From positions 248,001-312,000 of IMG/VR virus record IMGVR_UViG_3300021197_001489: DNA of 64,000 nucleotides. One strand, written 5' to 3'. Shown here piece after piece: positions 9,493 through 51,098 of this stretch. The notes beneath the pieces were generated by a model. That model worked only from the letters and a program-made list of their open reading frames with translations, was not told where the DNA came from and searched no databases. A program made the translations under genes and the position numbers. Numbering within the stretch: the stretch's first letter is position 1; each line of letters begins with the position of its first letter.

Positions 9493-9493
9493 A

Positions 9494-21042: not shown

Positions 21043-22074
21043 CTCTTGGGTTATTGAATCAAAAAATTCATCACTAAAAAACAGCGTTTTGTTTTTGCTG
21101 GCTATAGTTTTACAGCTATTCCAAATTGATTCCTGTTGATTATCAGGTAAGTTATTGATACGATCCATCTCTTTTATGACCATGAGCATGCGCTTGTCGC
21201 AGTCTGATTCTGTATCATAACTTTCGTCAATAAAGGGTGAGAATGTTTCGAATCCGTAACTGCGCAAATATTTCAGTGTTCCAGCACCATTCAGTATCAT
21301 AAAAGGATGCCCGCATGCAATTGGGCGTAGTGTTTTTTCTGTAAGGTGGATGCGACCATCGTATACAGTTTCTAACACAATGCTGCAATTTGTTTTTGCA
21401 AAGTCTTCGCAGTTATATTCAGCACTGCTATTGCTGTTAACAACGGCGTCAGGATCAATACTGCCCAGTTGCTTTCTGTCAACAAACCTAAGCAGTTTTA
21501 AAAAATGTTGTCGGTATTGTCTTGTGCCAGTTGTGCCTCTGGCATACACTAACCAATTAGCCTCTTTGTCTTCTTGCGGTAGTTCAAGACGTTGGTCATA
21601 CTGAGCATATCTATACCAGTCTCGAGCAATTGCTGCATGACTCCACCAATAAGCACATGCAAATAGTCCACTGTCTTCATAGCGTTCTACTTGAGGGCTA
21701 GCCAGTTCACTGTGTAATAATATCCATTTTTCTGTGAAGTTTTGTGGGTGCTGCCATCTTAGATTTAGGTTCTCATAGTTAGATTTTTTAATATCATCGA
21801 TTTGTGTTGGAATAAAGTTACCACTAGCTACAAGTGCGTTGAGGATCTTTTGATCATCACTGTACATGTCAAAATCCAATGGCTCTTGATCGTGACAAAT
21901 TAGCACAGGAAAAGCAGCGTATTTTTTACGATATATATCTTCGTTCATTCGATCTACATTGCTTACTAGATTGGCAATATCTTTTTGTCCCCAGGGATAG
22001 AAGTATTTGATTAAAAATTTATTTTCTACCACCTGGGCGACAAAATTGTATAAATTACTAGTAGGAACAGACAT
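21016..22074 (-). CDS. Hypothetical protein, glycosyltransferase-like C-terminus
   Basis: SIVLET...LTEKTLRPI..GHPF..L...GTLKYLRSYGF resembles the GT10/fucosyltransferase-like donor-binding region. Start moved to ATG 22074. Confidence 0.5.
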   Translation of the reverse strand: MSVPTSNLYNFVAQVVENKFLIKYFYPWGQKDIANLVSNVDRMNEDIYRKKYAAFPVLICHDQEPLDFDMYSDDQKILNALVASGNFIPTQIDDIKKSNYENLNLRWQHPQNFTEKWILLHSELASPQVERYEDSGLFACAYWWSHAAIARDWYRYAQYDQRLELPQEDKEANWLVYARGTTGTRQYRQHFLKLLRFVDRKQLGSIDPDAVVNSNSSAEYNCEDFAKTNCSIVLETVYDGRIHLTEKTLRPIACGHPFMILNGAGTLKYLRSYGFETFSPFIDESYDTESDCDKRMLMVIKEMDRINNLPDNQQESIWNSCKTIASKNKTLFFSDEFFDSITQELRDNVLSI

Positions 22075-22090
22075 CTTAGAAAGGTACCTT

Positions 22091-23326
22091 ATGAGAATTG
22101 GATTTATTGGGCTTGGCAAGCTCGGACTTGATTGCGCCGAAGTAATGGCAGAAAAGTATACAGTACATGGCTACGATATTTACCCGCGTACTTCGGACAG
22201 TGTAAAAGTTTGTAGCACTCCCAAAAAGATGATTGACAACAGTGATTGGATTTTTATTGCTGTTCAAACGCCACACACAGAAGGTTATGATGGTAGTGTT
22301 CCTAGCTCGCACATGGAACCCAAAGACTTTGGACATGATGCTGTTAAAGATGCTATTAACATGGTAAACGAACTGGCTATCGAACCAAAAAAGATTGTGC
22401 TTATTTCAACAGTGCTTCCTGGAACTACACGACGTGAGTTTTATCCCTTGCTAAACAGTGAGCATCAATTTTTATACAATCCATACTTGATTGCAATGGG
22501 CAGTGTAAAGTGGGACTTTGCTAACCCTGAAATGGTTATGATAGGTACCGAAACAGGTGATCCTACAGAGATGGAAGATCTAATCAATCTGTATCGCCCA
22601 CTGATGAAAAACAATCCACGTTATGTTACAGGTACCTGGGACGAATGCGAAAGTATAAAGATATTTTACAACACATTTATCAGTGCTAAAGTAGGGCTTG
22701 TAAACATGATACAAGACTTTGCACTAAAGATAGGCAACATAAACGTTGACGTTGTTACAGACGCTCTAGCACAGAGTACAATGCGTATTATGGGTCCGAA
22801 GTACATGACAGCAGGCATGGGAGACTCAGGCGCATGCCATCCACGAGATAACATTGCACTGCGTTGGCTTGCAAAAGAATACGATATCGGTTACGATATG
22901 TTTGATACTATTATGGGTGCTAGAGAAGTACAAGCAAAGAATCTAGCAGACTTTTTGGTAGAACACGCCGACGGCAAGCCTATTGTGATACACGGGAAAG
23001 CATACAAACCTGATGTGCCTTTTTGTATCGGAAGTTATAGCACACTGATTGGTTTCTACATTGAAGAGCAAGGATTGCCGGTAAAGTATGTAGATCCAAT
23101 TGCAGACAATCCAAAAGACGTAGTTGATAGCATTGACGAAGCATCAATGATATTGTATGCACACAATAGATATATCACATACGGTTATACTGGACAGTAT
23201 ACCAAGGATGATACTTTCTACTGTGACATTCCACCAGGTTCTGTTGTTGTTGATCCATGGAGAAACCTGCCTAAACACAGTAACAGTTACGAAGTAATAC
23301 ATTATGGCAACACCAGACCACAATAA
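22091..23326 (+). CDS. ugd: UDP-glucose/GDP-mannose dehydrogenase family
   Basis: GFIGLGKLG, IAVQTP, STVLPGT, YNP, E..KIFYN, GDSGACHPRD, GKAYKP. Confidence 0.92.
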   Translation: MRIGFIGLGKLGLDCAEVMAEKYTVHGYDIYPRTSDSVKVCSTPKKMIDNSDWIFIAVQTPHTEGYDGSVPSSHMEPKDFGHDAVKDAINMVNELAIEPKKIVLISTVLPGTTRREFYPLLNSEHQFLYNPYLIAMGSVKWDFANPEMVMIGTETGDPTEMEDLINLYRPLMKNNPRYVTGTWDECESIKIFYNTFISAKVGLVNMIQDFALKIGNINVDVVTDALAQSTMRIMGPKYMTAGMGDSGACHPRDNIALRWLAKEYDIGYDMFDTIMGAREVQAKNLADFLVEHADGKPIVIHGKAYKPDVPFCIGSYSTLIGFYIEEQGLPVKYVDPIADNPKDVVDSIDEASMILYAHNRYITYGYTGQYTKDDTFYCDIPPGSVVVDPWRNLPKHSNSYEVIHYGNTRPQ

Positions 23327-26554: not shown

Positions 26555-27577
26555 ATGGCTGCTCGCGTAGGCTTTTGCTGCAAGTATCTGCATCCAGATC
26601 AGACACAAAAGAAAAAAGTCCTAATGGAGATCCAGCAACAGCGTACAGAAAAATGTACCACTGTTGCGTGGCTTAAACGGCAGACTCGTGAAGTTGCTGA
26701 ACAGCGTTTGTATGACATCATGCAACACAACATGCAAAGCGCGGCCAACTTGGTTGAGTATGTAGGACGCCTTGAGCCAGGATTGCGAATGGTGCGACTG
26801 GGCAGCAATCAATTGCCCATGTACACACAGCCAGACTTCAGTTACTTTTGGCAACAACCTGATATCAAAGTTGAATTGGCAAAAGGTTACGCACAAGTAG
26901 GCAAACTTGCACGACAGTGGGATGTGCGCCTAAGTTTTCACCCTGGACAGTTTTGCGTATTAGCCAGTGACAGTGAAGATATCGTAAATAGAAGCATAGA
27001 GGAGTTTGAATATCATGTTGACATGGTCAGATGGATGGGCTTCGGCCGTAAATTCCAAGACTTCAAGTGTAATGTCCACATCAGCGGTCGCCAGGGTCCA
27101 GCCGGTATCCAACGAGTCCTCCCAAGACTATCTCCAGAAGCGCGAAACTGCATTACTATTGAGAATGACGAGATGTCGCACGGTCTCGACGCATCGCTTG
27201 AGCTCAGCAAAGACGTCGCCCTCGTTCTTGATATACACCACCACTGGGTCCGTACCGGTGAATACATCGAGGCCACCGACGATAGAGTTCTTCGCGTAAT
27301 TGATAGCTGGCGCGGTATACGCCCAGCATTGCATTACTCAGTATCACGTGAAGACATACTGGTTGATCACGATCCTAATGTGCGTCCAGATATGGAAAGT
27401 TTACTCGCAGCAGGCTTCAAGAAACAAAAACTTAGAGCGCACAGTGACTTCTACTGGAATCATGCAGTCAACGAATGGGCTGCAACATTTGCCAAAGATT
27501 TTGACATACAATGTGAGAGCAAGTGCAAGAATCTTGCCAGTCATGCATTCCACAATAACTATATTAAAGGAGACTAA
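26555..27577 (+). CDS. uvsE: UV damage endonuclease UvsE/UvdE
   Basis: GFCCK, VRLGS, RLSFHPGQF, NVHISG, IEND, VLDIHHHW, HYS, HSD, E.KCK. Confidence 0.95.
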   Translation: MAARVGFCCKYLHPDQTQKKKVLMEIQQQRTEKCTTVAWLKRQTREVAEQRLYDIMQHNMQSAANLVEYVGRLEPGLRMVRLGSNQLPMYTQPDFSYFWQQPDIKVELAKGYAQVGKLARQWDVRLSFHPGQFCVLASDSEDIVNRSIEEFEYHVDMVRWMGFGRKFQDFKCNVHISGRQGPAGIQRVLPRLSPEARNCITIENDEMSHGLDASLELSKDVALVLDIHHHWVRTGEYIEATDDRVLRVIDSWRGIRPALHYSVSREDILVDHDPNVRPDMESLLAAGFKKQKLRAHSDFYWNHAVNEWAATFAKDFDIQCESKCKNLASHAFHNNYIKGD

Positions 27578-28586: not shown

Positions 28587-28871
28587 ATGGTAGGGACTTT
28601 TATGTTGCTGTTTAATCTAACAGTAAGCGGACCAAGCGGTGCCGCAGGCGATGAGATCATAAATGTGTACAGCAAAAGATTTGATACACAGATCAAATGC
28701 GAACAGTTTTTAGATGATTATGAATGGCTGATTCGCAGCAAAGGCGTTAGTGCATTTCAAGACATGCTGAAAAAAGGTTACAGTGTAAAACTAAACAGTG
28801 TAACCTGTGATACACCAGCGGAAGCAGCAAGTGTGTCTAAAGCAATTACTCAAAACATGGGTCGTGGATAA
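28587..28871 (+). CDS. Small two-Cys protein (paralog family)
   Basis: FMLLFNL...FDTQIKC...VTC. Confidence 0.5.
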   Translation: MVGTFMLLFNLTVSGPSGAAGDEIINVYSKRFDTQIKCEQFLDDYEWLIRSKGVSAFQDMLKKGYSVKLNSVTCDTPAEAASVSKAITQNMGRG

Positions 28872-29671
28872 TGAAACGTTTACTACAAACTGTTGCAATG
28901 ATGTCTTGTTTAAGCTCGCCAGTTGCAGCTGAGCAGTGGGACGGAACTTGGCCGCCCCCAGAAGTGATTCGCACTGAAGATCTGATTCTTGGCGGACTGC
29001 TTATGAACTTTCTTGATCAGTTCAACGAAGAGAAAAAGTTTGAAAAACAGCGCAGGCAACCAATATACACTGCACCTGATGCAAACAATCTCAATACCAG
29101 TGGTATGAACACAGCATACAACAGCTACAAACAGCAAGCAAATGCTGGCGATGAACAGATAAAAGGATTGCTTTCTGGTTATCCGCACCGTGCATACAGA
29201 GTAAGCATGCGAAATGCTACCTACAACATGCAGAACCGTGACATGATTGTGAATGTAAACTTTGTTGTAAGTTGGAACCCTAGCTTTTTAGCCGAACTAA
29301 ACCACACACTGTTGCAAACTGGCACCAATACTGCTAGTCCAACACACTGGGCATTTGTTAACACTTCGCACAGTCAAGACAGAACGGGCAAGAAATATCG
29401 GTTCGATCAAACACGCGGTGACTTGTTGATTAATACACTGTATCGGGCAGGCCCTCAAATACAGGTGCTAGCAGGCGGAAGAAGTCTGGGTTGCTGGGAT
29501 ATTCCTGAGCTTAGTGGACGTTCAAACAGTGCCACAGGTATGGTACAAACGACCCGTAACGGAGTAACATTTAAGACTTGGATGGAGTTACAGAGCAGTA
29601 TCAGTTTTGCAGTGCAAACGCCACCTGATAATGTTCAATTGAGAGTTGTGAACCAGAACTTATGCCTCTAG
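28871..29671 (+). CDS. Secreted hypothetical protein
   Basis: Signal peptide MKRLLQTVAMMSCLSSPVAA. Confidence 0.6.
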   Translation: MKRLLQTVAMMSCLSSPVAAEQWDGTWPPPEVIRTEDLILGGLLMNFLDQFNEEKKFEKQRRQPIYTAPDANNLNTSGMNTAYNSYKQQANAGDEQIKGLLSGYPHRAYRVSMRNATYNMQNRDMIVNVNFVVSWNPSFLAELNHTLLQTGTNTASPTHWAFVNTSHSQDRTGKKYRFDQTRGDLLINTLYRAGPQIQVLAGGRSLGCWDIPELSGRSNSATGMVQTTRNGVTFKTWMELQSSISFAVQTPPDNVQLRVVNQNLCL

Positions 29672-31203
29672 GTTCTGCGTTCACGGCCTAAGGCCTTGCT
29701 ATCAAGGTCTCCACCACGAGGCTGAGCTTTGACATCACTTGTTTGTGTGCCGGGCTCAGCCTTTTTCACTGGCTGATTATCAGGAATGTCTGTACTAATA
29801 TCGGCAATCTCTGTTTCTTCATCAGTTGCGCCATTTTTAAGAACTTTGAATACCAAGTTGCCTTTGCCTTGCGTACTCATATAACTCTTAGCAGCACTCA
29901 TTAACACACCACTGACAGTTTTGCTTGGATACACACACTGGAATGGTTTTACATTAATAGTATCTTCGGTGTTTGTGCTAAGTGTGTACATCTGTACCAA
30001 TGCACTGTGATTCAGTATATCACTGGCTGCTTCACTGAAGTTGGTATCGTCATTTACTATATCGCATATAGGATATGCAATTGCACTTAGCATATGTTCA
30101 ATTGGAATAATTCTAGTCATGTCACGTGCTTTGCGTCCATTGTATAGTTCTTGAAGTTTGTCACTTTTAAGCACACTCATTACGTCATCATCTGGACCTA
30201 GGCCTTTTAGTTCTTTGACTTGCGTTTTTTCATCAGGGGTAATAAATCCAAATGCAATACCAAGATTCAATGGTCCATCAGTGTGACCACCATTTTTGAT
30301 TATTTCCATTATGCTAATCGCTTCTTGATATTTTTCTACTAGACGTTTGCCTTCTGGAGCCTCGCGTAAATCTTGCACACTTTTAAGCAAGTTGATAACA
30401 CTGGCCATTGCTCCTGCTTGAGCTTTTGAAGATATTTTTATTTGCTTCCCATCTGGATTGATTAGCAAACTGTCAAACAATCCATCTGTGGTACCGGCAT
30501 TGAAACTGATAACACAACTACTATAGCCTGATCCACTGAAGAAAATATCTTCAGCTTCAGCAGCATTGCCGTCTGTGTTCTTGCCCAGGATCAATGCCAT
30601 TGGCTGAAGCATTTCACAAAAGTAATTTGAAAATGCTTCTGGATTCATATTGCCTCTTGGGATCTCCATTGGAAAGTCATTGGCCATAAAGTAATCTGTA
30701 GCAGCAACTTCGTCTGAATCTTCGCCAAACTTGGCAACAATCTGTTTGCGTATACTGTCTGGTGTTTGACTTTGTAAATCTGTGAGTATTTCAGTTGGCT
30801 TGTAACCCGAGTTTTCTTTGACAGCAGCTTTGCTTTGGTACTTGAAGCCACCAGGTAAATCGTTAGGGAATCTGTTTAGTGATCTGTTTGGATTAATCTT
30901 TTGAAACCATCTACCAACTACAAAGTCCTTGCCTGCTGCGTCTACAAAACGTGCCAGTCCAAATGCTTTGTTTGAACCTTGACTGTTTGCCCATTGTATC
31001 TCTGTGTCAGAAATCCCCAACTGTGCAGTCAAATCCAGCAGTGCAGCGTTCATTGCGTCTGCGTCCTCATAACCGTCTTTTTCTGGAAAAAAGTCTAAAC
31101 TTTGAAAGGTTAATACGTCACCTTCAGGATTAGCAAATTTTTCGCCCGGTTTACGGTTCGCTAGACCCACTCCTTCAGCAATGATTTCTACATATTCTCT
31201 CAT
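29668..31203 (-). CDS. Hypothetical protein
   Basis: 511-aa ORF; GAGG RBS; GATAAGTA late-type promoter upstream on the minus strand. Confidence 0.65.
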   Translation of the reverse strand: MREYVEIIAEGVGLANRKPGEKFANPEGDVLTFQSLDFFPEKDGYEDADAMNAALLDLTAQLGISDTEIQWANSQGSNKAFGLARFVDAAGKDFVVGRWFQKINPNRSLNRFPNDLPGGFKYQSKAAVKENSGYKPTEILTDLQSQTPDSIRKQIVAKFGEDSDEVAATDYFMANDFPMEIPRGNMNPEAFSNYFCEMLQPMALILGKNTDGNAAEAEDIFFSGSGYSSCVISFNAGTTDGLFDSLLINPDGKQIKISSKAQAGAMASVINLLKSVQDLREAPEGKRLVEKYQEAISIMEIIKNGGHTDGPLNLGIAFGFITPDEKTQVKELKGLGPDDDVMSVLKSDKLQELYNGRKARDMTRIIPIEHMLSAIAYPICDIVNDDTNFSEAASDILNHSALVQMYTLSTNTEDTINVKPFQCVYPSKTVSGVLMSAAKSYMSTQGKGNLVFKVLKNGATDEETEIADISTDIPDNQPVKKAEPGTQTSDVKAQPRGGDLDSKALGRERRT

Positions 31204-32225: not shown

Positions 32226-32358
32226 TTGCTTGAGGAAAGCAATACCGCGGTCTTTTCCGCCGTCAGTAGTCTTTGCTACCGTCATCTGCTTTTAAGGCGC
32301 GAGCCGCCCTAGTCTTTCCCAGTGCCACTCATTTTTTCGGAGCTGAGGTCGCTCTTTT
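32226..32358 (-). ncRNA. Candidate structured ncRNA or leader with three NAAAGA-loop hairpins
   Basis: GC-rich non-coding tract behind GATAAATA; hairpins CTGG-GAAAGA-CTAG, CGGTAG-CAAAGA-CTACTG, GCGG-AAAAGA-CCGC, TTGCTT-TCCTC-AAGCAA. Confidence 0.6.
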
Positions 32359-32454
32359 AATAAACTTATTTATCGAATAGTACAGCGATGCTTACGTTTT
32401 TTCGCGGTTCTGCGTTAAAATAACGCAGGTTTTTGCAACCAAAAGGCATTTTCT

Positions 32455-32508
32455 GGTTGACCTTTGATCTATATGTGTTATACTGTATGTACAGTTAGAA
32501 ACAAGGAG
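32455..32508 (+). promoter_or_regulatory. Early promoter with conserved leader (copy 1)
   Basis: ggTTGACC-17-TATACT then gtatgtacagttagaaacaaggag. Confidence 0.85.
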
Positions 32509-32514
32509 AAGCAA

Positions 32515-32763
32515 ATGATTAATTATATTGGTGCAAAAAACGGCGGTATTGAAATGTCAGACAGCAACAGTGTTGTTGGATTTTCTGATACTGCACAAGG
32601 CATTGCAAATATCATTTGCAAATACGGCTTGGATCGCAATGTGTATGGTAGTTCAACCATGGACTTTGCTGACGAAGAAGGCTTTGATCACTATGATGGC
32701 GCAAAGAATCTATGGGATCAAGCAGTTGATATCTATAACTGGAACGTAAACAAAGTAGCATAA
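32515..32763 (+). CDS. Early hypothetical protein
   Basis: ATG after the leader RBS AAGGAG. Confidence 0.6.
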   Translation: MINYIGAKNGGIEMSDSNSVVGFSDTAQGIANIICKYGLDRNVYGSSTMDFADEEGFDHYDGAKNLWDQAVDIYNWNVNKVA

Positions 32764-33235: not shown

Positions 33236-33463
33236 ATGGATAGTGTGCTAAAATGGGTTGCCACTAGTATACTGTGTGTAGGCAGTTACATTGTGAGTGC
33301 GCATCCCGAAGCATACCCACTGGGTCCACTTGTGTTGTTCACTGGTGGACTTGTGTGGCTTGTGGTTAGTGTAATGTGGCGTGAACGTGCGCTTATTATC
33401 ACCAATGGTGTTATGTGCAGCATTACTGTATTTGGATTGGCCAAATACTACGGTTACATTTAA
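33236..33463 (+). CDS. Small multi-TM membrane protein
   Basis: Three hydrophobic helices. Confidence 0.6.
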   Translation: MDSVLKWVATSILCVGSYIVSAHPEAYPLGPLVLFTGGLVWLVVSVMWRERALIITNGVMCSITVFGLAKYYGYI

Positions 33464-33473
33464 CCAAAAACAA

Positions 33474-33502
33474 TTGACGAGCTCTTCGATGTACTGTAAA
33501 CT
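33474..33502 (+). promoter_or_regulatory. sigma70-type promoter in front of a non-coding hairpin region
   Basis: TTGACG-17 bp-TAAACT. Confidence 0.6.
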
Positions 33503-33508
33503 GTATAC

Positions 33509-33616
33509 ATTGTTCGAAATAGGCTTTCTAGTAGATCGGACATTGAGTCGCTGTCAATTCCCAAAGACACCTCAAGGAGGGCATGCTGCGGGAGTGTGCC
33601 TTCCTTCTTTGGGAAT
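33509..33616 (+). ncRNA. Candidate ~110-nt small RNA with a long bulged hairpin
   Basis: ATTCCCAAAG/CTTTGGGAAT (10 bp) and AAGGAGGGCAT/GTGCCTTCCTT (11 bp) helices separated by a one-sided ACACCTC bulge. Confidence 0.55.
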
Positions 33617-33642
33617 AAGTATTTAAAATAAAGGAATAGTAA

Positions 33643-33981
33643 ATGGAATATACATTGTTTGAAACCATAGCAATCACTGGATTGGTGTTTACTTTGTACC
33701 TTCTGTACAAATGGTATCGCCATGCAGTACAACGTAACAAACATGCCGAAGCAGCCTTCAAAGAATTTGTTGAGCGCATTGTGCTTTGTAAAGTTGAGCA
33801 TGAAGACGGTGTATTTTATCTTTACAATGGCTTGAACAACGAATTTGTTACACAAGGTAAAACCAGTGCAGAAATTGAAAAGTTTATTAACAGCCACGAC
33901 AACAAGTTTTTTATGAACTGGGGTTTTGATGAAGAAATTGTTGAACAAGTTAAACGCATGGAAGCAGAATTTATTAAATGA
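33643..33981 (+). CDS. Hypothetical protein with N-terminal TM
   Basis: AAGGA RBS; N-terminal TM helix. Confidence 0.6.
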   Translation: MEYTLFETIAITGLVFTLYLLYKWYRHAVQRNKHAEAAFKEFVERIVLCKVEHEDGVFYLYNGLNNEFVTQGKTSAEIEKFINSHDNKFFMNWGFDEEIVEQVKRMEAEFIK

Positions 33982-34661: not shown

Positions 34662-35111
34662 AGACACTGATAAACAGGGAATCTGTCCTGTAATGTCTCC
34701 GTGGGAAGCAGCAAGACGTATTCGCGCAATGGACCAACGTATTATAGAATTGGAGAATGCAGTTGCAGAGCTATGCGGAAGACAGCCTGAAAACAACAAT
34801 AAAGACTGATTTAGCATTTCAGTTAACTATGATATTGGCAAGTTGTATGATTGTGTTTACAACCACTAGTCTGGGTATGATTATTGGCGGCGGCAGCTGT
34901 CTTTATGCATTCCTTGCTTTTATTTTTGCGCCAAGATGATGAACGATTTAAAACCCTATGATTATGTAGTTGTTTCAGTGACTGCGTGGATGATAATGAA
35001 CCATGTAAAAGTCATACTGATGTACGGACAAAATGGCTTGTTGACTGGCGCAGTAGGTATTTGGTTGTTTTGGACTATATTTAATTTGTATTCTAATTGG
35101 AGGGCGCGATA

Positions 35112-35549
35112 GTGTTTGATTTATTTAAAAAAAGCAAACCAGCAGGCTTGTACTTTGCCTACGGTGCTAACATGTGCAAACGCAGTATGAGGCACCGTTG
35201 CCCAAATGCTAAACCAGTAAAAGCATTTTATTTGATTGGTTGGCGCTTGATGTTTAGCAACCATGCTACCATTGTTCCTGCAGCTCATAGCGCAGTGCCT
35301 GGATGTTTGTGGAGCATTACAGAAGACTGTGAAAAATCACTGGATGGTTTTGAGGGCTTTCCAGGGTATTATAGCAAAATTTGGTTGACACAACACGGTG
35401 AATCATTTATGGTATATGAAATGAACCCGCCACTGAATCCCAAGTATACACCAGATAACAGTTATGTTAATCTATTACAAGAAGGCTACAACGACTGGGA
35501 TCTTGATCCACAGTACCTGGATGACGCATTATACTATGAGCTCGGATAA
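35112..35549 (+). CDS. Gamma-glutamylcyclotransferase (AIG2-like)
   Basis: YFAYGANM, VPGCLW, LDGFEG..YY. Confidence 0.85.
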   Translation: MFDLFKKSKPAGLYFAYGANMCKRSMRHRCPNAKPVKAFYLIGWRLMFSNHATIVPAAHSAVPGCLWSITEDCEKSLDGFEGFPGYYSKIWLTQHGESFMVYEMNPPLNPKYTPDNSYVNLLQEGYNDWDLDPQYLDDALYYELG

Positions 35550-35787
35550 CACACTGTACAGTGAGTACATGAATCTTATTAAAACTGGAGAAGGTTTTTC
35601 GCATGCTATTGCCATTGAACGCAACAGCGGCGAAGTTGATTCGGTGATTTTGTGGTGCAAAACAAACTTTGAAGACACTTGGCGTTGGCAAATTTGTCGC
35701 AGTAGTTCGCCAAGGCAACCTGGGCACTACACATTTTTCTTTAATAATAATTCAGATTACATGGCTTTTGTGTTAAAATATGGTTGA
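35536..35787 (+). CDS. Hypothetical protein
   Basis: Overlaps the GGCT stop; W-rich. Confidence 0.5.
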   Translation: MSSDNTLYSEYMNLIKTGEGFSHAIAIERNSGEVDSVILWCKTNFEDTWRWQICRSSSPRQPGHYTFFFNNNSDYMAFVLKYG

Positions 35788-35837
35788 CCTTTTTGTAAAT
35801 ATCGGTTATACTATATATAACAGTTAGAAAAAAGGAG
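35782..35837 (+). promoter_or_regulatory. Early promoter with variant leader
   Basis: ggTTGACC...TATACT atatataacagttagaaaaaaggag. Confidence 0.8.
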
Positions 35838-35843
35838 AATGAT

Positions 35844-38649: not shown

Positions 38650-39707
38650 TATTTTACCAACTCTGGCTTGAAGATTGATTTAAGACCAAATGCTTCTGTG
38701 TTGAACTTTACCAGTGTTTGCAGTGCATCAGCAGTTACAAACTTCATCAGTGTGTTTACTTGTGCATTGCCTGCATCACCTAGCATCCACTCATAGTTGC
38801 CAACTTTCTTTTGAATCTTCTTGATTGACTCAGGATTGGTTGACACCTTTTCAAGTGCTGCCACAAGTTTTGCTCTATTAGGATTGCCTTTGTTTACCCA
38901 CAATGCTTTTTGTAATCCATCTCGGAAACTTTTTACCAGCTTGTATGCATCTGCTAGATCGCCTTTTGGGTCTGCTTTGTACAGGGCAGAAAATTGTGTT
39001 TCCATTTGAATGCCTGGATAGTTTGGATCATCTGCGTGGGTACCGTCTGGCTGTAGAATGCCATGATGGAACCATAAACGTGCTTCACCTTTGTCAATTA
39101 CTGGCTGTACATGCTTTTTGAATGAAGCAGGATTTTCACGAGTGCCATTGAGTTCGCCACGCTTGAATGCAAGACGTCTTTCGTTGCCCTTCATTCCTTT
39201 AATCCAGTTTACCTTTTCGTTGAAGCAACCAACGTATGCTTCTGTGCTAGGTAAATTACCACACTTTAGCAGTGTCATTGCGATACCTTCAGGAACTTTA
39301 CCGCCGCCTCCTGAGAAACTTGTTCTGTCAGCATTGGGATTATGATCGCCATGTACTGCTGTAATAATGTTAAGGTTCATTAGTCCAACTGAATCATAGT
39401 CAGCATAGTTGTAATCCACTGCTTCTTGTAAGAAACTTACACCGTTGCCGCCGTTGGATACCATAATAGTTTTGTCATCAAAACGCAGTTCATTGTGGAA
39501 CTTGTTAAAGCCTGGAATATCCCTTGCACCACGGATGTGCTTGAGAATAATTTTTTCATCCAAGTATTTTTCCATCTCAGTGGCCACAATCTGTGCCCAC
39601 TGACTTGTACCGCCGCCTGGCTTCTGTGGTACAATCATTGTGTAATCAGCAACTGCTGATGTTGTAAAACCTAGCATCAGTGCTAGTGATAATAAAAGTT
39701 TACGCAT
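38649..39707 (-). CDS. tctC: Tripartite tricarboxylate transporter substrate-binding protein (TctC/Bug-like)
   Basis: Signal peptide; MIVPQKPGGGTS; next to tctA. Confidence 0.8.
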   Translation of the reverse strand: MRKLLLSLALMLGFTTSAVADYTMIVPQKPGGGTSQWAQIVATEMEKYLDEKIILKHIRGARDIPGFNKFHNELRFDDKTIMVSNGGNGVSFLQEAVDYNYADYDSVGLMNLNIITAVHGDHNPNADRTSFSGGGGKVPEGIAMTLLKCGNLPSTEAYVGCFNEKVNWIKGMKGNERRLAFKRGELNGTRENPASFKKHVQPVIDKGEARLWFHHGILQPDGTHADDPNYPGIQMETQFSALYKADPKGDLADAYKLVKSFRDGLQKALWVNKGNPNRAKLVAALEKVSTNPESIKKIQKKVGNYEWMLGDAGNAQVNTLMKFVTADALQTLVKFNTEAFGLKSIFKPELVK

Positions 39708-41139
39708 AATCTATTCTTCCTTTTCTCATAATGCTGTATACAAATATTCCAATAATACACACAATTAGTGACATGAATATTGGACGTGTGATTAATGTTT
39801 CCACAGTGTAAAGTCCTGTGATCTGAAATGTTAATCCTTCAACTTTTTCTGCCAGTATGTAACCGATTAACATAGCAGGTCTGCTAAACTTGTAGTGTCG
39901 CATTGTAAATCCTATTACAGAAAATACTGCTAACATTGCAAGGTCTTCCCAACCGCCTGTGTACTGCATTGAAGTAAAAATAATCAATCCTAGTAGCACA
40001 GGAAAATAATATTTGTATGGAACTGCGGCCAGTTTACTAATTGGCTTGATTAAAACCATACAAATCAGTGCAACTACAACTGTGGCACCTAAAAAGCCAA
40101 ATGTCATACTTGCAAATAATTCTGTGTCTTCTGCAATATCTGGCGTGCCCAGTTCGATGCCCAAGTACATAAACAGGCTCATCAATATAGCTGCAAACTT
40201 TGCACCTGGTATGCCAAATATAACTGTGGTAATCATTGATGTTGCCTTTTGTGCATTGTTAGCACCCTCAGGTCCTATCACACCCTTGATGTTGCCATTG
40301 CCAAACTTTTCTTTGGGATTACTGGCAACTGCTTGTCCATACGCCATCCAGTCTGCCATTTGCCCACCTAGTCCAGGCAACAAGCCAATGAACGCACCTA
40401 TAAAGCCACCGCGCAAAGCAAGCCATCTGTTCTCCCAACTTGCTTTCATGCCTGCCCATAGCTCACCATCGCGTATTTCACTGTCAGCAGTGCTGTGCTT
40501 TAAAAACAGCCCTCGTGTTAGTTCAGGAACAGCAAACAGTCCTGCGGCAACTGCCATTATCTGTATACCATCTTCTAAGTAGAACCAATATTGTGCGCCG
40601 AATCTGGCTGCATTATTATCTGGGTTGACACCTACCATGCCTACAAAGATTCCAAAAGCAATAGCAAGGATGGTGCGGAACCAAAACTGGTTGGTTAAAA
40701 ATCCCACAGTGACAAATGCCATTAAAACAAAAGCCCACAGTTCAGGCACACCCAGTATATAGATTAAATTGGTATACCATGGCAACAATAAAAATACCAA
40801 ACACCCCCAAAGCAAACCGTTTACAGTTGATGTTGTTACTGCGGCACTGATAGCATAGCCTGCTCTGCCACGTTGGGCTAGTGGAAAGCCATCAACCATG
40901 GTAGCGGCTGCACTGTTAGCACCGGGTATGCCTAGCAGTATTGCAGTGAAACTGTCACCTGTTGTGCTTGCAGCAACTACTGCCATAAGGAATATTACTC
41001 CCATATATGGCTCGTGTGCAAAGTAGCTAATAAATCCAAACAGTGCAACCAAACCTGTTGTTGCCCCTGCACTGGGAATAATGCCTATAATTAGGCCATA
41101 AAATACTCCGCCGAGCAGATATGTAATCATCTCGATCAT
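39700..41139 (-). CDS. tctA: Tripartite tricarboxylate transporter permease TctA
   Basis: ILLGIPG...AATMVDGFPLA..G, IGLLPGLG, GPEGANNA, FGIPG; about 12 TM helices. Confidence 0.92.
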   Translation of the reverse strand: MIEMITYLLGGVFYGLIIGIIPSAGATTGLVALFGFISYFAHEPYMGVIFLMAVVAASTTGDSFTAILLGIPGANSAAATMVDGFPLAQRGRAGYAISAAVTTSTVNGLLWGCLVFLLLPWYTNLIYILGVPELWAFVLMAFVTVGFLTNQFWFRTILAIAFGIFVGMVGVNPDNNAARFGAQYWFYLEDGIQIMAVAAGLFAVPELTRGLFLKHSTADSEIRDGELWAGMKASWENRWLALRGGFIGAFIGLLPGLGGQMADWMAYGQAVASNPKEKFGNGNIKGVIGPEGANNAQKATSMITTVIFGIPGAKFAAILMSLFMYLGIELGTPDIAEDTELFASMTFGFLGATVVVALICMVLIKPISKLAAVPYKYYFPVLLGLIIFTSMQYTGGWEDLAMLAVFSVIGFTMRHYKFSRPAMLIGYILAEKVEGLTFQITGLYTVETLITRPIFMSLIVCIIGIFVYSIMRKGRIDYA

Positions 41140-43942: not shown

Positions 43943-44001
43943 GATATTATTAATTATCTATGCATTTTTCAGCGGAAAAATAAAGCCAAATGGCATTATT
44001 C

Positions 44002-44055
44002 GGTTGACCATTAGGATATATGTGTTATACTGTATGTACAGTTAGAAACAAGGAG
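44002..44055 (+). promoter_or_regulatory. Early promoter with conserved leader (copy 2)
   Basis: ggTTGACC-17-TATACT gtatgtacagttagaaacaaggag. Confidence 0.85.
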
Positions 44056-44061
44056 TAGAAC

Positions 44062-44286
44062 ATGTCAAAGATGGCTTCAAATGCAAAGTTCAAGCAGTTT
44101 GTTACAAACCTTAGTGTTGAAGATCAGCACACTGTGATCGAGCGTCAGAGTCGTTTGCTTCCTGCATTTATCATGCAAGAAGTTGCCAGTACTAACAATC
44201 CAAAAGTTATTCGCAAGTTGGAGAGCCGCCTGAAGCAGGTTCGCTTGATGATGAGTTCATTGATTGCAAATGGGAGTGTAGTATAA
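44062..44286 (+). CDS. Early hypothetical protein
   Basis: Follows the leader RBS. Confidence 0.6.
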   Translation: MSKMASNAKFKQFVTNLSVEDQHTVIERQSRLLPAFIMQEVASTNNPKVIRKLESRLKQVRLMMSSLIANGSVV

Positions 44287-45746: not shown

Positions 45747-45775
45747 GAAAGCCACCTTCGGGTGGCTTTCTTTTT
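45747..45775 (+). terminator. Rho-independent terminator with UUCG tetraloop
   Basis: GAAAGCCACC-TTCG-GGTGGCTTTC-TTTTT. Confidence 0.92.
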
Positions 45776-45787
45776 ATAAGTAGTAGT

Positions 45788-47674
45788 ATGAAGAACGTAT
45801 ATCTGGCACAAATGAGCTTGGAATTGCCAGGATCGAACTATTATTATTTTCCATACAGTATTGGAGTGGTTTGGGCATACGCAACTACACAACCTGATAT
45901 AAATGAAAACTATCAATTGTGTAATATTTTTAGCGTAAAAGAGCCAATCGACCGTTTAATGGAAAAAATTGTTGATCCAGGAATACTTGGACTTTCAAGT
46001 TATACATGGAACACCATGTACAACGAGGAACTTGCACGACGTGTCAAAGAAAAGTATCCTGAATGCACAGTGATAATTGGTGGGCCAAATACGCCTAACA
46101 ACAGCGAAGGGTATTTTGAAACCCGCCCTTATGTAGATTTTATAACACATCAAGAAGGCGAGGGGTCATTTACTGGATTACTTCGGCATCTTGTGGGCAA
46201 GCAGGAACTGATGGAAATTGCTGGGATCAGCATCAATAACAACGGCAAAACTGTAATGACCGGGCCAAGTCAACGTGTGGCTCTCGACGATGTACCATCC
46301 CCATATCTCATGGGCCTGTTTGACAACATCAAAACTGAACACCCGAACTTGATATTTAATGGTGTGCTCGAGACCAATAGAGGATGTCCGTTTATGTGTA
46401 CATTCTGTGACTGGGGCGGCACAACATTTTCAAAACTAAAACGTTTTGGCATGCAACGCATAGCTGACGAAATTGACTGGATGGGTCGCAACAAGATTGA
46501 AATGGTTGTAAACAGTGATGCCAACTTTGGTATACTCAAAGAACGCGATGTACTCATTGCAGATATGTTGATTGAGACCAAACAAAAGTACGGCTTTCCT
46601 GTACTGTTTGATACAAACTGGAGCAAGAACGCAACAACACAACTAGTCGACATTGCTGTCAAACTTATGGAAGCGCAGATGATGAGACGCTTTACCATGG
46701 CATTGCAAAGCACTAACCAAGACGTCTTAAAGAATATTAAACGTGTAAATCTCAAAGAAGAAGCAATGACTCGTGTTGCAGAAACTGCCTTTAGCAATGG
46801 CATGAGCGTTAACACCGAATTAATTATTGGCCTGCCTGGTGAAACATGGGAGTCATGGACTTCTGGTTTGTGTCATCTATTAAGTAGGGATATTATTGTT
46901 GAAGCGTATCCTGTGACTATATTGATGAACAGTGAAATGGGCCAGGATGACTATATTGACAAACATGGTATCACATCAACAACACTAAAAAGTTTTTTCT
47001 CTAAGTATGTTGATGAATGGCAAATCATGCTTACTGGAACAAACACATTGCCCGAAGCACAGATGAAAAAATTATGGTTATGGACTTGGCTTACATCAAT
47101 GATGGATGCAAATGGATATACACAGGTTGTATCGCGCTATCTCAACAAACGTCACGGCGTGCCATTTGAAAAGTTCTACGAGCGGCTGCTGGACTATGGA
47201 CTTGAAACACCCGATAGTGCGTTTCATCCTTGGTTGCACAAGTGGCAAGACTATGCTGAACAACTGGAGTTCAACATGTTTCTAGCCGGACTAACTTATT
47301 CACCTGTGATGCAAGACCTTGGACTGCACAAACGACAGCAAACCTATCAGGACATTTACGCTGTAGCACAGGAATTTGCTCCGCAAGATACACTGTTGCA
47401 GGATGTTATGATAGCGCAAGAGAGGCAACAAACCATATTCAATCACGAAGAAACAACCAAAATTACACTGAACGCCAATGTGTTTGAATACTCGTTGGGC
47501 AAAGAAGAATTAGATATTGCGCCAACAAGCTATGTATTCCACAGGGCATATCCGCCAAAAGGCACAAATCCTAGCTGGGTTGAGTGGTATAACAGTACTA
47601 GAAAAAACAAAAAGTGGCAGGCTAGGGTAGAAAAAATCACAAAAAAAGCAACTCTTTTTCACGAAAACGGTTGA
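45788..47674 (+). CDS. B12-binding radical SAM protein
   Basis: N-terminal cobalamin-binding-like domain (GLSSYTWN, IIGGP, EGE); TNRGCPFMCTFC (CxxxCxxC); D.NFG; ELIIGLPGET. TATAAGTA promoter at 45775. Confidence 0.92.
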   Translation: MKNVYLAQMSLELPGSNYYYFPYSIGVVWAYATTQPDINENYQLCNIFSVKEPIDRLMEKIVDPGILGLSSYTWNTMYNEELARRVKEKYPECTVIIGGPNTPNNSEGYFETRPYVDFITHQEGEGSFTGLLRHLVGKQELMEIAGISINNNGKTVMTGPSQRVALDDVPSPYLMGLFDNIKTEHPNLIFNGVLETNRGCPFMCTFCDWGGTTFSKLKRFGMQRIADEIDWMGRNKIEMVVNSDANFGILKERDVLIADMLIETKQKYGFPVLFDTNWSKNATTQLVDIAVKLMEAQMMRRFTMALQSTNQDVLKNIKRVNLKEEAMTRVAETAFSNGMSVNTELIIGLPGETWESWTSGLCHLLSRDIIVEAYPVTILMNSEMGQDDYIDKHGITSTTLKSFFSKYVDEWQIMLTGTNTLPEAQMKKLWLWTWLTSMMDANGYTQVVSRYLNKRHGVPFEKFYERLLDYGLETPDSAFHPWLHKWQDYAEQLEFNMFLAGLTYSPVMQDLGLHKRQQTYQDIYAVAQEFAPQDTLLQDVMIAQERQQTIFNHEETTKITLNANVFEYSLGKEELDIAPTSYVFHRAYPPKGTNPSWVEWYNSTRKNKKWQARVEKITKKATLFHENG

Positions 47675-47722
47675 CATAAGCTATAAACCTGTTATACTGT
47701 ATGTACAGTTAGAAACAAGGAG
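47669..47722 (+). promoter_or_regulatory. Early promoter with conserved leader (copy 3)
   Basis: ggTTGACA-17-TATACT gtatgtacagttagaaacaaggag. Confidence 0.85.
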
Positions 47723-48103
47723 ATGCTTATGCCACAGATTTTTACAGTTTATCAGATCGTTATTGACAAAGACCTTAGTGATCTTATCAACAAAGAAGGT
47801 CACGGTTGTCATGTAAAGAGCCTGGCTCGCATGCAAGCAATGCTGGAAGGCGATGTGCGTCTTGGTGTAATGCATGATTGTTACACAAAGGTAGCAGAAG
47901 TTGTTGCTGATGATTTGGAGCATGTGTTTGAAGTTGGTAACATTGGTCCTGAGGACCGTATTACACGCCTTGAAAAGATGACCAGCATCAGCGTTGGAGA
48001 CATTATTGCAGATGCAGATGGCGTCTGTAGTGTAGTTAACAATGTTGGATTTACTCCACTTGCACCGTCATTCCACAAAATGGTATTGAAGGAGGCAGCA
48101 TAA
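47723..48103 (+). CDS. Early hypothetical protein
   Basis: Follows the leader; SISVGDII motif. Confidence 0.6.
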   Translation: MLMPQIFTVYQIVIDKDLSDLINKEGHGCHVKSLARMQAMLEGDVRLGVMHDCYTKVAEVVADDLEHVFEVGNIGPEDRITRLEKMTSISVGDIIADADGVCSVVNNVGFTPLAPSFHKMVLKEAA

Positions 48104-48242: not shown

Positions 48243-48455
48243 ATGGGTTTTCGCGAGGCGCTAATGGGACATCCAGCAGAAAGCATCAACACCAAGGACC
48301 ACTGGGCAGTTGGCTTTGAGTGGCCAGTTGTTGGGAGCAAGGGCGATTTATACACAGTTGAAATGACACATTATGGTTTTGAGTGTGATTGTCCTGCATA
48401 CAGAAAGTGCAAGCATATCAAAAGCATTGAGGAGAGGTTTAATGACCAAGACTGA
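48243..48455 (+). CDS. SWIM zinc-finger protein
   Basis: YTV...ECDCPAYRKCKHI. Confidence 0.75.
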   Translation: MGFREALMGHPAESINTKDHWAVGFEWPVVGSKGDLYTVEMTHYGFECDCPAYRKCKHIKSIEERFNDQD

Positions 48456-49086
48456 TCCGGTGGCGTTTAGCGCAGAAGATATTTGGGGTGCGGCTGCACA
48501 TGCAACTCGCGTCAACGAGGGCTATTTGAAAGAAGATGAATACAACTGGAACACTGCTCGGTTAACCAAACATGCAAACAGAGATGTTGCCAAGAAAGCA
48601 CTGGCTGAAAGCACTATCACAGAGGCTGATCGCAAGGAGGGCATGGAGGCACGGCACTTCTTGCACAGCCGACTAACAATGAAGGCGCTGTCCAAGCGAC
48701 TCACAGATTTTGAAGCAGGACTTGCCAAAGCAGTGGCATTAGACGAGTTTATTGTGCCGCAAGACAGAATGATGATTGGCATTGTTAACAGTCAAATAGT
48801 CAGCTATCATCGCCAGCTTCAAGAAGAATCAATGACCAAGGATGCAGTGTGGGGATATGTAGCAGAAGTTGGCCTGCGTGTTGACTTAAAAGTGACACCG
48901 ACTGCACGTTTTTGGATTGACAGATACGACACTTTCCGTTATAATAGTATTACAAAAGACGGATATAAAGCCAGCTTCTACTACAGAGAAAGACTTGAAG
49001 TAGGCAATACAGTGGAAGTTCGCGGCACTGTTAAGAAACATGCGGACAATACAACATATCTTAATCGCGTAAAGATTGAAGGGTAG
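48442..49086 (+). CDS. Hypothetical protein with possible C-terminal OB-like domain
   Basis: GGAG RBS; C-terminal VEVRGTVKKH...TYLNRVK. Confidence 0.55.
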   Translation: MTKTDPVAFSAEDIWGAAAHATRVNEGYLKEDEYNWNTARLTKHANRDVAKKALAESTITEADRKEGMEARHFLHSRLTMKALSKRLTDFEAGLAKAVALDEFIVPQDRMMIGIVNSQIVSYHRQLQEESMTKDAVWGYVAEVGLRVDLKVTPTARFWIDRYDTFRYNSITKDGYKASFYYRERLEVGNTVEVRGTVKKHADNTTYLNRVKIEG

Positions 49087-51075: not shown

Positions 51076-51098
51076 AAATTAGACGGAGCAGCTATCAA

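What the first reader, a model, noticed from the sequence alone, without database searches (positions are those of the whole stretch)
33474..33621. Candidate early small RNA with a 21-bp bulged hairpin exposing an anti-SD-like CACCUC
Seen: a sigma70-like promoter (TTGACG-17-TAAACT) faces ~110 nt with no plausible ORF. The 3' half folds into 10-bp and 11-bp helices (33557-33616) with a one-sided ACACCTC bulge, and buries a perfect AAGGAGG. A small GACA/TGTC hairpin precedes it, and the next gene has its own ATAAGTA box right after. Known: the 16S rRNA 3' end is CACCUCCUUA. Inference: a trans-acting sRNA able to pair with GAGGUG-type SDs, an RNase III substrate, or a decoy for host RNA-binding or defence proteins.
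Basis: partly seen in the sequence, partly recalled or inferred. Interest (0 to 1): 0.65.

Follow-up and report, generated by a model that had tools for sequence, protein, structure and literature searches.

The report
Conserved early small RNA in jumbo phage
An uncultured 316-kb aquatic phage carries a promoter-driven, roughly 105-base structured non-coding RNA that is conserved far better than its neighbouring genes; it matches no known RNA family and its function and target are unknown.

Summary
The hairpin at 33557-33616 is the most stable 70-nt local fold of 25,572 windows tested across both strands. The strong fold is specific to the + strand. It has 11 + 13 bp around a 7-nt bulge, CACCUCA.

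The promoter (33474-33502) is a diverged member of the phage's repeated early-promoter cassette. In relatives its hexamers are kept while the 17-nt spacer drifts.

The ~111 nt from the predicted start to the hairpin end are 90-95% identical between three deep lineages. Adjacent genes are 73-86% identical, with third codon positions at 60-68%. The unit keeps its sequence while the genes on both sides are swapped. It is not protein-coding and matches no Rfam family.

In the window lineage the hairpin is followed by UUCUUU and then an ATAAGTA late-type promoter box. That terminator-then-box layout recurs at 45751-45782. I therefore read the element as a self-contained early small-RNA gene that can also act as a 5' leader on read-through.

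The anti-SD idea is untested and unsupported: similarity to the 16S 3' end is at chance level, AAGGAGG is not conserved as a 7-mer, and no target was found. There is no compensatory covariation because divergence is too low. Host, transcript ends and function remain unknown.

The parts
33474..33479 (+). -35 hexamer TTGACG of the early (sigma70-type) promoter
   Evidence: It is TTGACA in all relatives, while the 17-nt spacer is only about 53-88% identical. It resembles the repeated cassette ggTTGACm-N16/17-TATACT.
33497..33502 (+). -10 hexamer TAAACT (TACACT in relatives)
   Evidence: It is followed by GTATACA, which resembles the GTATGTACA or GTATACA that follows the -10 of the phage's other early cassettes.
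33507..33509 (+). Predicted transcription start (inferred, not mapped)
   Evidence: It lies 5-7 nt after the -10. Near-invariant conservation begins here, at TACATTG.
33508..33545 (+). P1: 5'-terminal hairpin, 9 bp plus an internal loop plus a 3-bp tip
   Evidence: The same fold is predicted independently in four variants from the three lineages. U9-G34 becomes U-A in the L003 lineage. The internal-loop positions 33519-33521 are the most variable.
33546..33556 (+). Linker AGUCGCUGUCA, predicted single-stranded
   Evidence: Two of its 11 positions vary.
33557..33567 (+). 5' strand of the lower helix, AUUCCCAAAGA
   Evidence: invariant in all 7 variants. It would be single-stranded if the RNA ends at the U-run.
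33568..33574 (+). One-sided bulge CACCUCA; CACCUC is invariant
   Evidence: The opposite strand contributes 0, 1 or 2 nt in the three lineages, so the loop stays asymmetric.
33575..33605 (+). Upper 13-bp GC-rich helix with GCGGG loop (33588-33592)
   Evidence: The changes G-U to A-U, U-G to U-A and A-U to G-U keep pairing. Four G-U pairs make the fold specific to the + strand.
33605..33610 (+). U-rich run UUCUUU after the upper helix; candidate intrinsic-termination tract
   Evidence: A terminator-like site was flagged by the scan. The run reads UUUUUU in the L003 lineage and UAAUUU in the L037 group.
33606..33616 (+). 3' strand of the lower helix, UCUUUGGGAAU
   Evidence: UUUGGGAA is invariant.
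33615..33621 (+). ATAAGTA late-type promoter box for the next gene
   Evidence: The same hairpin, U-run, ATAAGTA layout occurs at 45751-45782. The box is kept in the L003 lineage and absent in the L037 group.
33630..33645 (+). SD AAAGGA and ATG of the 112-aa gene (33643-33981)
   Evidence: This stretch is predicted unpaired.
33236..33463 (+). Upstream DUF6552 gene; a neighbour, not part of the unit
   Evidence: Pfam PF20189. In other genomes it is replaced by unrelated 375-386-aa genes. More distant phages carrying DUF6552 lack the element.

Best explanation
This is a self-contained early gene for a small structured non-coding RNA of about 100-110 nt.

Proposed mechanism. Host sigma70-type RNA polymerase starts at about 33507-33509 from a diverged copy of the phage's repeated early-promoter cassette. 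The transcript folds into a 5'-terminal hairpin (P1, 33508-33545), an 11-nt linker and a 24-bp hairpin interrupted by the bulge CACCUCA (33557-33616). The GC-rich upper helix plus UUCUUU stops a fraction of polymerases at about 33608-33612. That would release a discrete RNA in which the linker, AAUUCCCAAAGA and CACCUC (about 28 nt) are single-stranded between a protective 5' hairpin and a terminator hairpin. This is the classical layout of a trans-acting small RNA. Polymerases that read through carry the whole element, with the lower helix closed, as the 5' leader of the next gene. In the window lineage that gene also has its own late-type ATAAGTA promoter.

Shown: the fold, its strand specificity, the promoter footprint, purifying selection at the RNA/DNA level, the non-coding status and the modular inheritance.

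Inferred: the transcript ends, termination, and action in trans through the invariant unpaired segments. The target or binding partner is unknown.
For: 1. Stability. The hairpin is the most stable 70-nt fold in the 64-kb window (rank 1 of 25,572, z -5.5). The + strand folds at -44.8 kcal/mol (z -4.15) and the - strand at -28.5 (z -1.5).

2. Promoter. TTGAC-N18-TANACT occurs 2 times against 0.17 expected. The site shares the -35, the -10 and the first transcribed bases with cassettes at 9449, 32457, 35784, 44004, 47671 and 51038. Across lineages the hexamers are kept and the spacer drifts.

3. Selection. The element is 90-95% identical between the three deep lineages. The downstream gene is 73-77% identical (third positions 60-62%) and DUF6552 is 79-86% (third positions 68% in the one pair measured, window vs L003). 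Conservation begins at the predicted start and ends at the hairpin.

4. Module behaviour. The upstream gene is DUF6552 or one of three 375-386-aa genes that are only 31-39% identical to each other. The downstream gene is the 112/107-aa gene or a 138-aa cupin-like gene. The element itself stays 99% identical within that group.

5. Not coding.

6. Substitutions at paired positions are nearly all wobble-compatible (U-G to U-A, G-U to A-U, A-U to G-U, G-C to G-U). The other changes fall in loops.

7. A hairpin, U-run, ATAAGTA layout recurs at a canonical terminator at 45751-45782. The other early cassettes reach their ATG 26-33 nt after the -10, whereas here the distance is 140 nt.

8. If the RNA ends at 33610 it folds as P1, then a stretch of about 28 nt that is mostly open, then a 14-bp terminator hairpin.

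9. Small RNAs made by premature termination in 5' UTRs are documented in giant phages (PMC11512511).
Against: There is no transcript evidence of any kind.

There is no compensatory (two-sided) covariation: 0 of 33 pairs, because only 7 variants in 3 lineages exist.

The U-run is short, is followed by GGG, and is broken (UAAUUU) in the L037 group. There the hairpin abuts the SD of the next gene with no other promoter, so in that group the element must function at least partly as a leader.

The invariant GGGAA on the 3' side suggests that the full lower helix, and so an RNA longer than the U-run, is what selection sees.

No target was found in the window. The host is unknown. There is only one copy per 64 kb, and the element is absent from more distant relatives.
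Confidence: 0.5

Rival explanations
1. The element is a purely cis-acting 5' leader of the early operon. The long bulged hairpin would be a processing or stability signal just upstream of the SD: for example an RNase III site like those of T7 early mRNAs or the lambda N leader, or a binding site for a phage or host regulator. P1 would protect the 5' end. No free small RNA with a function of its own would be made.
For: In every genome a same-strand gene starts 13-27 nt after the hairpin. In the L037 group the SD abuts the helix, there is no ATAAGTA box and the U-run is broken. The full 24-bp helix, including GGGAA on the 3' side, is invariant. The architecture of two helices of about one turn each around an asymmetric internal loop is that of phage RNase III signals (own knowledge). 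The downstream SD and AUG are predicted free.
Against: The gene that directly follows differs between lineages (112/107-aa gene or 138-aa gene), and the window gene has its own late-type promoter. A processing or stability hairpin does not explain near-invariance of loops, bulge, linker and P1. No alternative (antiterminator) fold exists: the 87-nt intermediate folds no better than shuffles (z +0.37). No known riboswitch or leader family matches. No other intergenic hairpin of this kind occurs in the window, unlike the multi-site T7 system.
Confidence: 0.3
2. The element is a DNA-level module boundary: a PeSL-like recombination cassette. Its conservation would reflect frequent homologous exchange between co-infecting phages rather than a function of the RNA.
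For: The promoter belongs to a repeated PeSL-like cassette family (PMC4122927). Sharp mosaic junctions lie at the -35 and at the 3' end of the hairpin.
Against: The 110-nt RNA part is single-copy: the covariance model finds no second copy in 64 kb. PeSLs act through repeats and carry their stem-loop upstream of the promoter. The promoter spacer inside the unit has diverged to 53-88% while the transcribed part has not, so conservation tracks the transcript. The fold is strand-specific and has G-U pairs. Between the three deep lineages the flanks on both sides have diverged, so recent transfer of exactly the transcribed segment would be needed three times.
Confidence: 0.08
3. The element encodes a small protein. 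One candidate is the frame open from 33381 to 33626, which was called as an 83-aa gene on contig L007. The other is the 11-codon ORF inside the hairpin.
For: Two reading frames stay open across the element in all lineages. A gene caller annotated one of them.
Against: Substitutions run about 2 synonymous to 7 non-synonymous. Synonymous positions are as conserved as the rest, whereas neighbouring genes differ at 32-40% of third positions. The N-terminal part would overlap DUF6552 and is missing where the upstream gene differs. There is no SD or ATG inside the conserved part. The hairpin ATG becomes ATA in the L037 group.
Confidence: 0.02

Closest known systems
5'UTR-derived small RNAs of giant phages made by premature termination (Pseudomonas phage 201phi2-1 sRNA005 and its phiKZ, EL and PA3 counterparts; PMC11512511)
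   Same: Both have a promoter followed within about 100 nt by a terminator-like hairpin directly upstream of a gene. Both are conserved in sequence and predicted fold across related large phages, and in both the function is unknown.
   Different: There is no sequence or Rfam relation. Those RNAs were seen as transcripts by ONT-cappable-seq, while here nothing is mapped. Those phages use their own RNA polymerases; here the promoter is sigma70-type. Here the following gene is not fixed.
PeSL (promoter-early stem-loop) cassettes of T4-like phages (PMC2839356, PMC4122927)
   Same: Both have a sigma70-like early promoter in a region of small variable ORFs. Both lie at junctions of insertions, deletions and replacements between close relatives. 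The window itself holds a repeated PeSL-like cassette family to which this promoter is related.
   Different: In PeSLs the stem-loop lies upstream of the promoter and the SD and ATG follow the promoter directly. PeSLs are repeated many times per genome. Here a single-copy 110-nt structured RNA lies between the promoter and the SD.
RNase III processing signals of T7 early mRNA and of the lambda N leader (own knowledge)
   Same: All are irregular hairpins of more than 20 bp, made of two helices around an asymmetric internal loop, lying between cistrons just 5' of the next SD in early transcripts of a virulent or lambdoid phage.
   Different: Cleavage is untested. T7 has about ten such sites, whereas here there is one per 64 kb. 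The loop is almost purely one-sided. The extra P1 domain and the invariant sequence have no counterpart.
Bacterial trans-acting sRNAs with C-rich unpaired seeds that pair with SD regions, ending in a Rho-independent terminator (e.g. RsaE/RoxS; own knowledge)
   Same: Both have a 5' hairpin, an unpaired C-rich stretch (CCCAAAGACACCUC) and a GC-rich terminator-like hairpin with a U-run, in about 100 nt with their own promoter.
   Different: There is no homology: the best Rfam matches are E 1.6-6 and far below gathering scores. No target is known, and the seed is sequestered in the lower helix in the full-length fold.

Membership tests
Any Rfam 15 family (6S, SRP, tmRNA, riboswitches, ribozymes, known phage RNAs) | Covariance-model score at or above the family's gathering threshold | tested here: not met
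   There were 0 hits in the whole window at gathering thresholds. In 33400-33700 with permissive filters the best hit is ncr1241 at 17.3 bits against a gathering score of 60 (E 1.6).
Stand-alone bacterial-type small RNA gene | Own promoter | tested here: met
   This is a sequence-level test only. The hexamers are conserved with a drifting 17-nt spacer, and the site is related to the phage's repeated early cassettes.
Stand-alone bacterial-type small RNA gene | Rho-independent terminator (GC-rich stem followed by a U-run) | tested here: inconclusive
   The 13-bp GC-rich helix is followed by UUCUUU in the window, UUUUUU in L003 and UAAUUU in the L037 group. The layout resembles the terminator at 45751-45775.
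Stand-alone bacterial-type small RNA gene | Non-coding, with conservation exceeding that of neutral sites | tested here: met
Stand-alone bacterial-type small RNA gene | Discrete transcript of defined ends | not testable with these tools
   No RNA data are available.
Stand-alone bacterial-type small RNA gene | Base-pairing target or protein partner | tested here: inconclusive
   The best duplex in the window is -29.1 kcal/mol, inside the range of 8 shuffled seeds (-26 to -34). The host genome is unknown.
PeSL cassette (T4-like phages) | Stem-loop immediately upstream of a sigma70-like early promoter, with SD and ATG directly downstream | tested here: not met
   Here the stem-loops are downstream of the promoter and the ATG is 140 nt from the -10. 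In the phage's own cassettes that distance is 26-33 nt.
PeSL cassette (T4-like phages) | Many similar copies per genome | tested here: not met
   Model R1 finds one copy in 64 kb. Only the promoter part resembles the repeats.
PeSL cassette (T4-like phages) | Located at indel or replacement junctions between related genomes | tested here: met
Phage RNase III processing signal | Hairpin of about 20 bp or more with an internal loop, intercistronic | tested here: met
   The hairpin has 11 + 13 bp around a 7/0-nt to 9/2-nt loop and ends 13-27 nt before the next ATG.
Phage RNase III processing signal | Cleavage by RNase III | not testable with these tools
   This needs an in vitro cleavage assay or a comparison of rnc mutant and wild type.
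Riboswitch / transcription attenuator | Mutually exclusive terminator and antiterminator folds | tested here: not met
   The MFE fold and the centroid coincide for the 115-nt RNA. The 87-nt nascent intermediate shows no stable alternative (-18.5 kcal/mol, z +0.37).
16S rRNA 3'-end (anti-SD) mimic | Sequence similarity to the 16S 3' terminus beyond a hexamer | tested here: not met
   The local alignment score against the last 60 nt of E. coli rrsH is 13.0. The shuffle mean is 13.0 +/- 2.1, and 516 of 1000 shuffles score as high.

The most novel reading that the evidence does not exclude
The RNA would be a trans-acting early phage riboregulator or decoy of a new family. After termination or processing, its invariant, exposed C-rich segment (CCCAAAGACACCUC) would pair with GAGGUG-type ribosome-binding sites of host mRNAs. 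Alternatively, the SD:anti-SD-like helix with its bulge would titrate a host RNA-binding or defence protein. Either way it would contribute to host takeover.
Probability: 0.1. Interest if true: 0.8.

Novelty: new member of a known kind. Interest (0 to 1): 0.5.

Why it matters
Few phage-encoded regulatory RNAs are understood, and almost none come from uncultured jumbo phages. This is a compact candidate defined from sequence alone. It has a recognisable promoter and a very stable fold, and purifying selection on it is stronger than on any neighbouring gene. It is inherited as a module while the genes around it are exchanged.

It can be tested directly in a heterologous host, by asking whether it initiates, terminates, or is cleaved by RNase III. 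It could also seed a new RNA family.

The analysis also exposes the phage's regulatory grammar: PeSL-like early cassettes and ATAA[G/A]TA late boxes. That grammar helps annotate this lineage of about 320-kb aquatic phages.

Tried and rejected
- Rfam: no family matched at gathering or permissive thresholds.
- INPHARED phages: no DNA or protein match for the neighbourhood.
- IMG/VR: only the source contig was found, using two flanking proteins, two DNA patterns and a protein alignment.
- GTDB representative genomes: no copy of the upper hairpin.
- Host: the phage's TctA gene has no close bacterial relative, so the host was not identified.
- Covariation: 0 of 33 pairs show two-sided changes, because there are only 7 variants.
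- Targets in the window: RNAduplex scans of four RNA segments against both strands gave a best non-self hit of -29.1 kcal/mol (32291-32340, - strand). A second hit at 50241-50290 lies inside a small coding region. Eight shuffled seeds reached -26 to -34, so neither is significant.
- 16S 3'-end mimicry: similarity is at chance level.
- GAGGTG depletion: 8 against 20 expected by dinucleotide shuffles. With a second-order Markov model on sense strands the expectation is below 8 and 6 are observed, so the depletion disappears.
- Mini-ORF in the hairpin and the long open frames: rejected as coding.
- Small GACA/UGUC hairpin: rejected in favour of P1.
- Riboswitch-type alternative fold: none found.
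- lambda-nut-like boxA resemblance of CGCUGUCAA, Cas12a-repeat-like UUUCUA/GUAGAU, and CsrA-type GGA motifs: these were recalled from memory only, are weak, and were not pursued.
- Contigs L049 and L050: they did not reach the element.
- The moraphage paper (PMC12619734) does not appear to describe this lineage: those phages have predicted Bacteroidota hosts and genomes up to 307 kb.

Full report
**Source and setting**

The window is part of IMGVR_UViG_3300021197_001489, a 316-kb viral contig. The same region, with an identical element and identical flanking genes, lies on the 316-kb record UEXM01000006.1. Neither the neighbourhood DNA nor the nearby 511-aa protein matches INPHARED phages. The window has no tRNA genes and no Rfam hit.

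The finding lies in a + strand cluster of small ORFs between about 32.4 and 36 kb. The upstream gene (33236-33463) is a DUF6552 protein. The downstream genes are a 112-aa protein (33643-33981) and a GDSL/DUF6071-like protein.

Yes. RNAfold of 33506-33620 gives two domains:
- A 5' hairpin, P1 (33508-33545).
- A long hairpin: an 11-bp lower helix (33557-33567 with 33606-33616), a 7-nt bulge CACCUCA (33568-33574), a 13-bp upper helix with four G-U pairs, and a GCGGG loop.

The energy is -44.8 kcal/mol, z -4.15, and 0 of 200 shuffles fold as well. The reverse strand folds at only -28.5 (z -1.5), so the structure is specific to the + strand as RNA. I folded every 70-nt window of both strands at a step of 5. 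The hairpin is the single most stable of 25,572 windows (-35.1 kcal/mol, z -5.5). No family of similar intergenic hairpins exists in the window.

**The promoter**

On consensus alone, TTGACG-17-TAAACT is unremarkable (9/12; 20 sites found against 16.7 expected). Three further observations support it.

- The pattern TTGAC-N18-TANACT occurs twice against 0.17 expected.
- The phage has a repeated early cassette, ggTTGACm-N16/17-TATACT-GTATGTACAGTTAGAAAcAAGGAG-N6-ATG. Copies lie at 32457, 44004 and 47671, with looser copies at 9449, 35784 and 51038. The finding's promoter shares the -35, the -10 and the first transcribed bases (GTATACA).
- In relatives the hexamers are kept (TTGACA, TACACT) and the spacer length is fixed at 17, while the spacer sequence drifts to 53-88% identity.

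In the other cassettes the ATG lies 26-33 nt after the -10. Here it lies 140 nt away. The element therefore looks like an early cassette with a 110-nt structured RNA placed between the start site and the SD.

**Relatives**

Homologues of the two flanking proteins led to contigs from ENA, JGI and Logan aquatic metagenomes. One metagenome DNA-pattern scan added 16 more loci. A covariance model (R1) finds the element once per locus, in 7 sequence variants that fall into three deep lineages:
- The window type.
- The L003 type, which includes a 323-kb contig.
- The L037 group.

More distant phages that carry DUF6552 at 54-81% identity lack the element within the flanks fetched. IMG/VR holds only the source contig. 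GTDB representative genomes hold no copy of the upper hairpin.

**Selection**

| Comparison between the three lineages | Identity |
|---|---|
| 111-nt element | 90-95% |
| Downstream 107/112-aa gene, nucleotides | 73-77% |
| Downstream gene, third codon positions | 60-62% |
| DUF6552, nucleotides | 79-86% |
| DUF6552, third codon positions (window vs L003 only) | 68% |

Conservation starts at the predicted start site and stops at the hairpin's 3' end.

The constraint is not protein-coding. Two frames are open, but the substitutions are about 2 synonymous to 7 non-synonymous and synonymous positions are conserved too. The ATG inside the hairpin is ATA in the L037 group.

Changes at paired positions are almost all wobble-compatible: U-G to U-A, G-U to A-U, U-G to U-A, A-U to G-U, and G-C to G-U. 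The rest lie in the P1 internal loop, the linker and the helix junction. The sequences are too similar for two-sided covariation (0 of 33 pairs). The fold therefore rests on thermodynamics, strand asymmetry and this substitution pattern. It is also predicted independently in four variants covering all three lineages.

**Modular inheritance**

The unit occurs in three contexts:
- DUF6552, then the element, then the 112/107-aa gene.
- DUF6552, then the element, then a 138-aa cupin-like gene, then the 107-aa gene.
- A 375-386-aa gene, then the element, then the 138-aa gene.

The three 375-386-aa alleles are only 31-39% identical to one another. Next to them, the element is 99% identical and the 138-aa gene is 97% identical. 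The break falls at the -35. Both edges of the unit are therefore recombination junctions, as described for PeSL cassettes of T4-like phages (PMC4122927, PMC2839356). The RNA part, however, is single-copy and lies downstream of the promoter. It does not meet the PeSL definition.

**How it most likely works**

ATAA[G/A]TA behaves as a late-type promoter box in this phage. TAAGTA is enriched 8.8-fold upstream of starts. Of 22 boxes, 12 precede an ORF start, against an 18.5% background, and these include tail and virion genes.

In the window and in L003 the hairpin's upper helix is followed by UUCUUU or UUUUUU, and then by ATAAGTA. The same hairpin, U-run, ATAAGTA layout occurs at the canonical terminator at 45751-45782.

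I infer that early transcription from 33474-33502 largely ends at the hairpin. This would give an RNA of about 100 nt. Cut at 33610, that RNA folds as P1, then about 28 mostly unpaired nucleotides (linker, AAUUCCCAAAGA, CACCUC), then a 14-bp terminator hairpin.

In the L037 group the U-run is UAAUUU and the helix abuts AGGAG-N5-AUG of the 138-aa gene. There, read-through must occur and the element is a leader. This context dependence, and the invariant 3' GGGAA, are why a purely cis-acting reading remains a strong rival. Under that reading the hairpin would serve RNase III processing, stability or regulator binding. No antiterminator alternative fold exists, so a classical riboswitch is unlikely.

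**The anti-SD idea**

CACCUC is invariant and exposed, but so is almost everything else in the element.
- Similarity to the 16S 3' end is at chance level.
- AAGGAGG varies in its first two bases, and only GGAGGG is invariant.
- GAGGTG is not depleted once codon-level composition is modelled.
- No in-window target beats shuffled controls.

The idea is not excluded, but nothing here supports it.

**Comparison and novelty**

The closest known kind is the 5'UTR-derived small RNAs made by premature termination in giant phages, one of which is conserved across genera (PMC11512511). In architecture the element also resembles T7 and lambda RNase III signals, and C-rich-seed bacterial sRNAs (own knowledge). 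It belongs to no described family.

I rate it a new member of a known kind: a well-delimited, strongly conserved candidate RNA family in an uncultured lineage of about 320-kb aquatic phages, with function unknown.

Noticed in passing
window 32439-32517, 43986-44064, 47653-47731; also 9449-9507, 35784-35843, 51038-51100: A repeated early-promoter cassette, ggTTGACm-N16/17-TATACT-GTATGTACAGTTAGAAAcAAGGAG-N6-ATG, recurs at these sites. The three best copies are 67-85% identical over 79 nt. At 32409-32429 a terminator-like stem-loop sits just upstream. This resembles the PeSL cassettes of T4-like phages.
   Followed up: partly
window 5966, 12602, 45776, 53794 (ATAAGTA); 19553 (ATAAATA): Late-type ATAA[G/A]TA boxes lie only 1-8 nt before the ATG of long ORFs with no SD in between. 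The pattern ATAAGTA-N4-8-ATG occurs 4 times against 1.2 expected. This suggests leaderless or near-leaderless late mRNAs, or that the box also serves in translation initiation. The ORF listing starts at 45743 (TTG) and 53757 (GTG) are probably really the ATGs at 45788 and 53805.
   Followed up: partly
whole window, sense strands of 95 predicted genes: The palindromic hexamers GTGCAC, AAGCTT and TACGTA are absent (0 against 20, 20 and 10 expected under a second-order Markov model). CTGCAG is depleted (8 against 29). This looks like restriction-site avoidance and could hint at the host's restriction-modification systems.
   Followed up: no
L044 2760-3905 (-), L045 4337-5497 (+), L031 upstream of the element: Three alleles of a 375-386-aa gene with an SGG(L/M)DS PP-loop-like motif are only 31-39% identical to one another. 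They sit directly next to a promoter, RNA and 138-aa-gene block that is 97-99% identical. The mosaic junction at the -35 is very sharp. Pfam finds no family for the L044 allele, the only one scanned.
   Followed up: partly
window 48633-48645: The 13-mer CAAGGAGGGCATG, which forms the bulge end and 5' arm of the upper helix, recurs exactly inside the 237-aa gene at 48373-49086. The RNA's 3' arm could pair there (-26.9 kcal/mol). By my own estimate, one such shared 13-mer is not improbable by chance (about 0.2).
   Followed up: no
window 39700-41139 (-): A full-length TctA-family tricarboxylate transporter subunit is encoded by the phage (Pfam E 2.7e-91). It has no close relative in 185,579 GTDB representative genomes.
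   Followed up: partly
window 18172-18635: Five copies of a roughly 66-nt (22-codon) repeat lie inside the 570-aa ORF at 17490-19202. The repeat unit carries several TGY (Cys) codons, which suggests a repeated Cys-rich module. The protein has no Pfam or PHROG match.
   Followed up: no
window 45788-47674; 26555-27577; 35097-35549; 58587-62453; 22007-23326: Auxiliary genes: a B12-binding radical SAM protein, a UvdE UV endonuclease, a GGACT-like gamma-glutamyl cyclotransferase, a 1288-aa protein with He_PIG and class-3 lipase domains next to tail genes, and a UDP-glucose dehydrogenase.
   Followed up: no
window 29641-29710: A pair of strong adjacent hairpins (-33.7 kcal/mol) lies where the + strand gene 28871-29671 and the - strand gene 29668-31203 converge. 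It is probably a bidirectional terminator.
   Followed up: no
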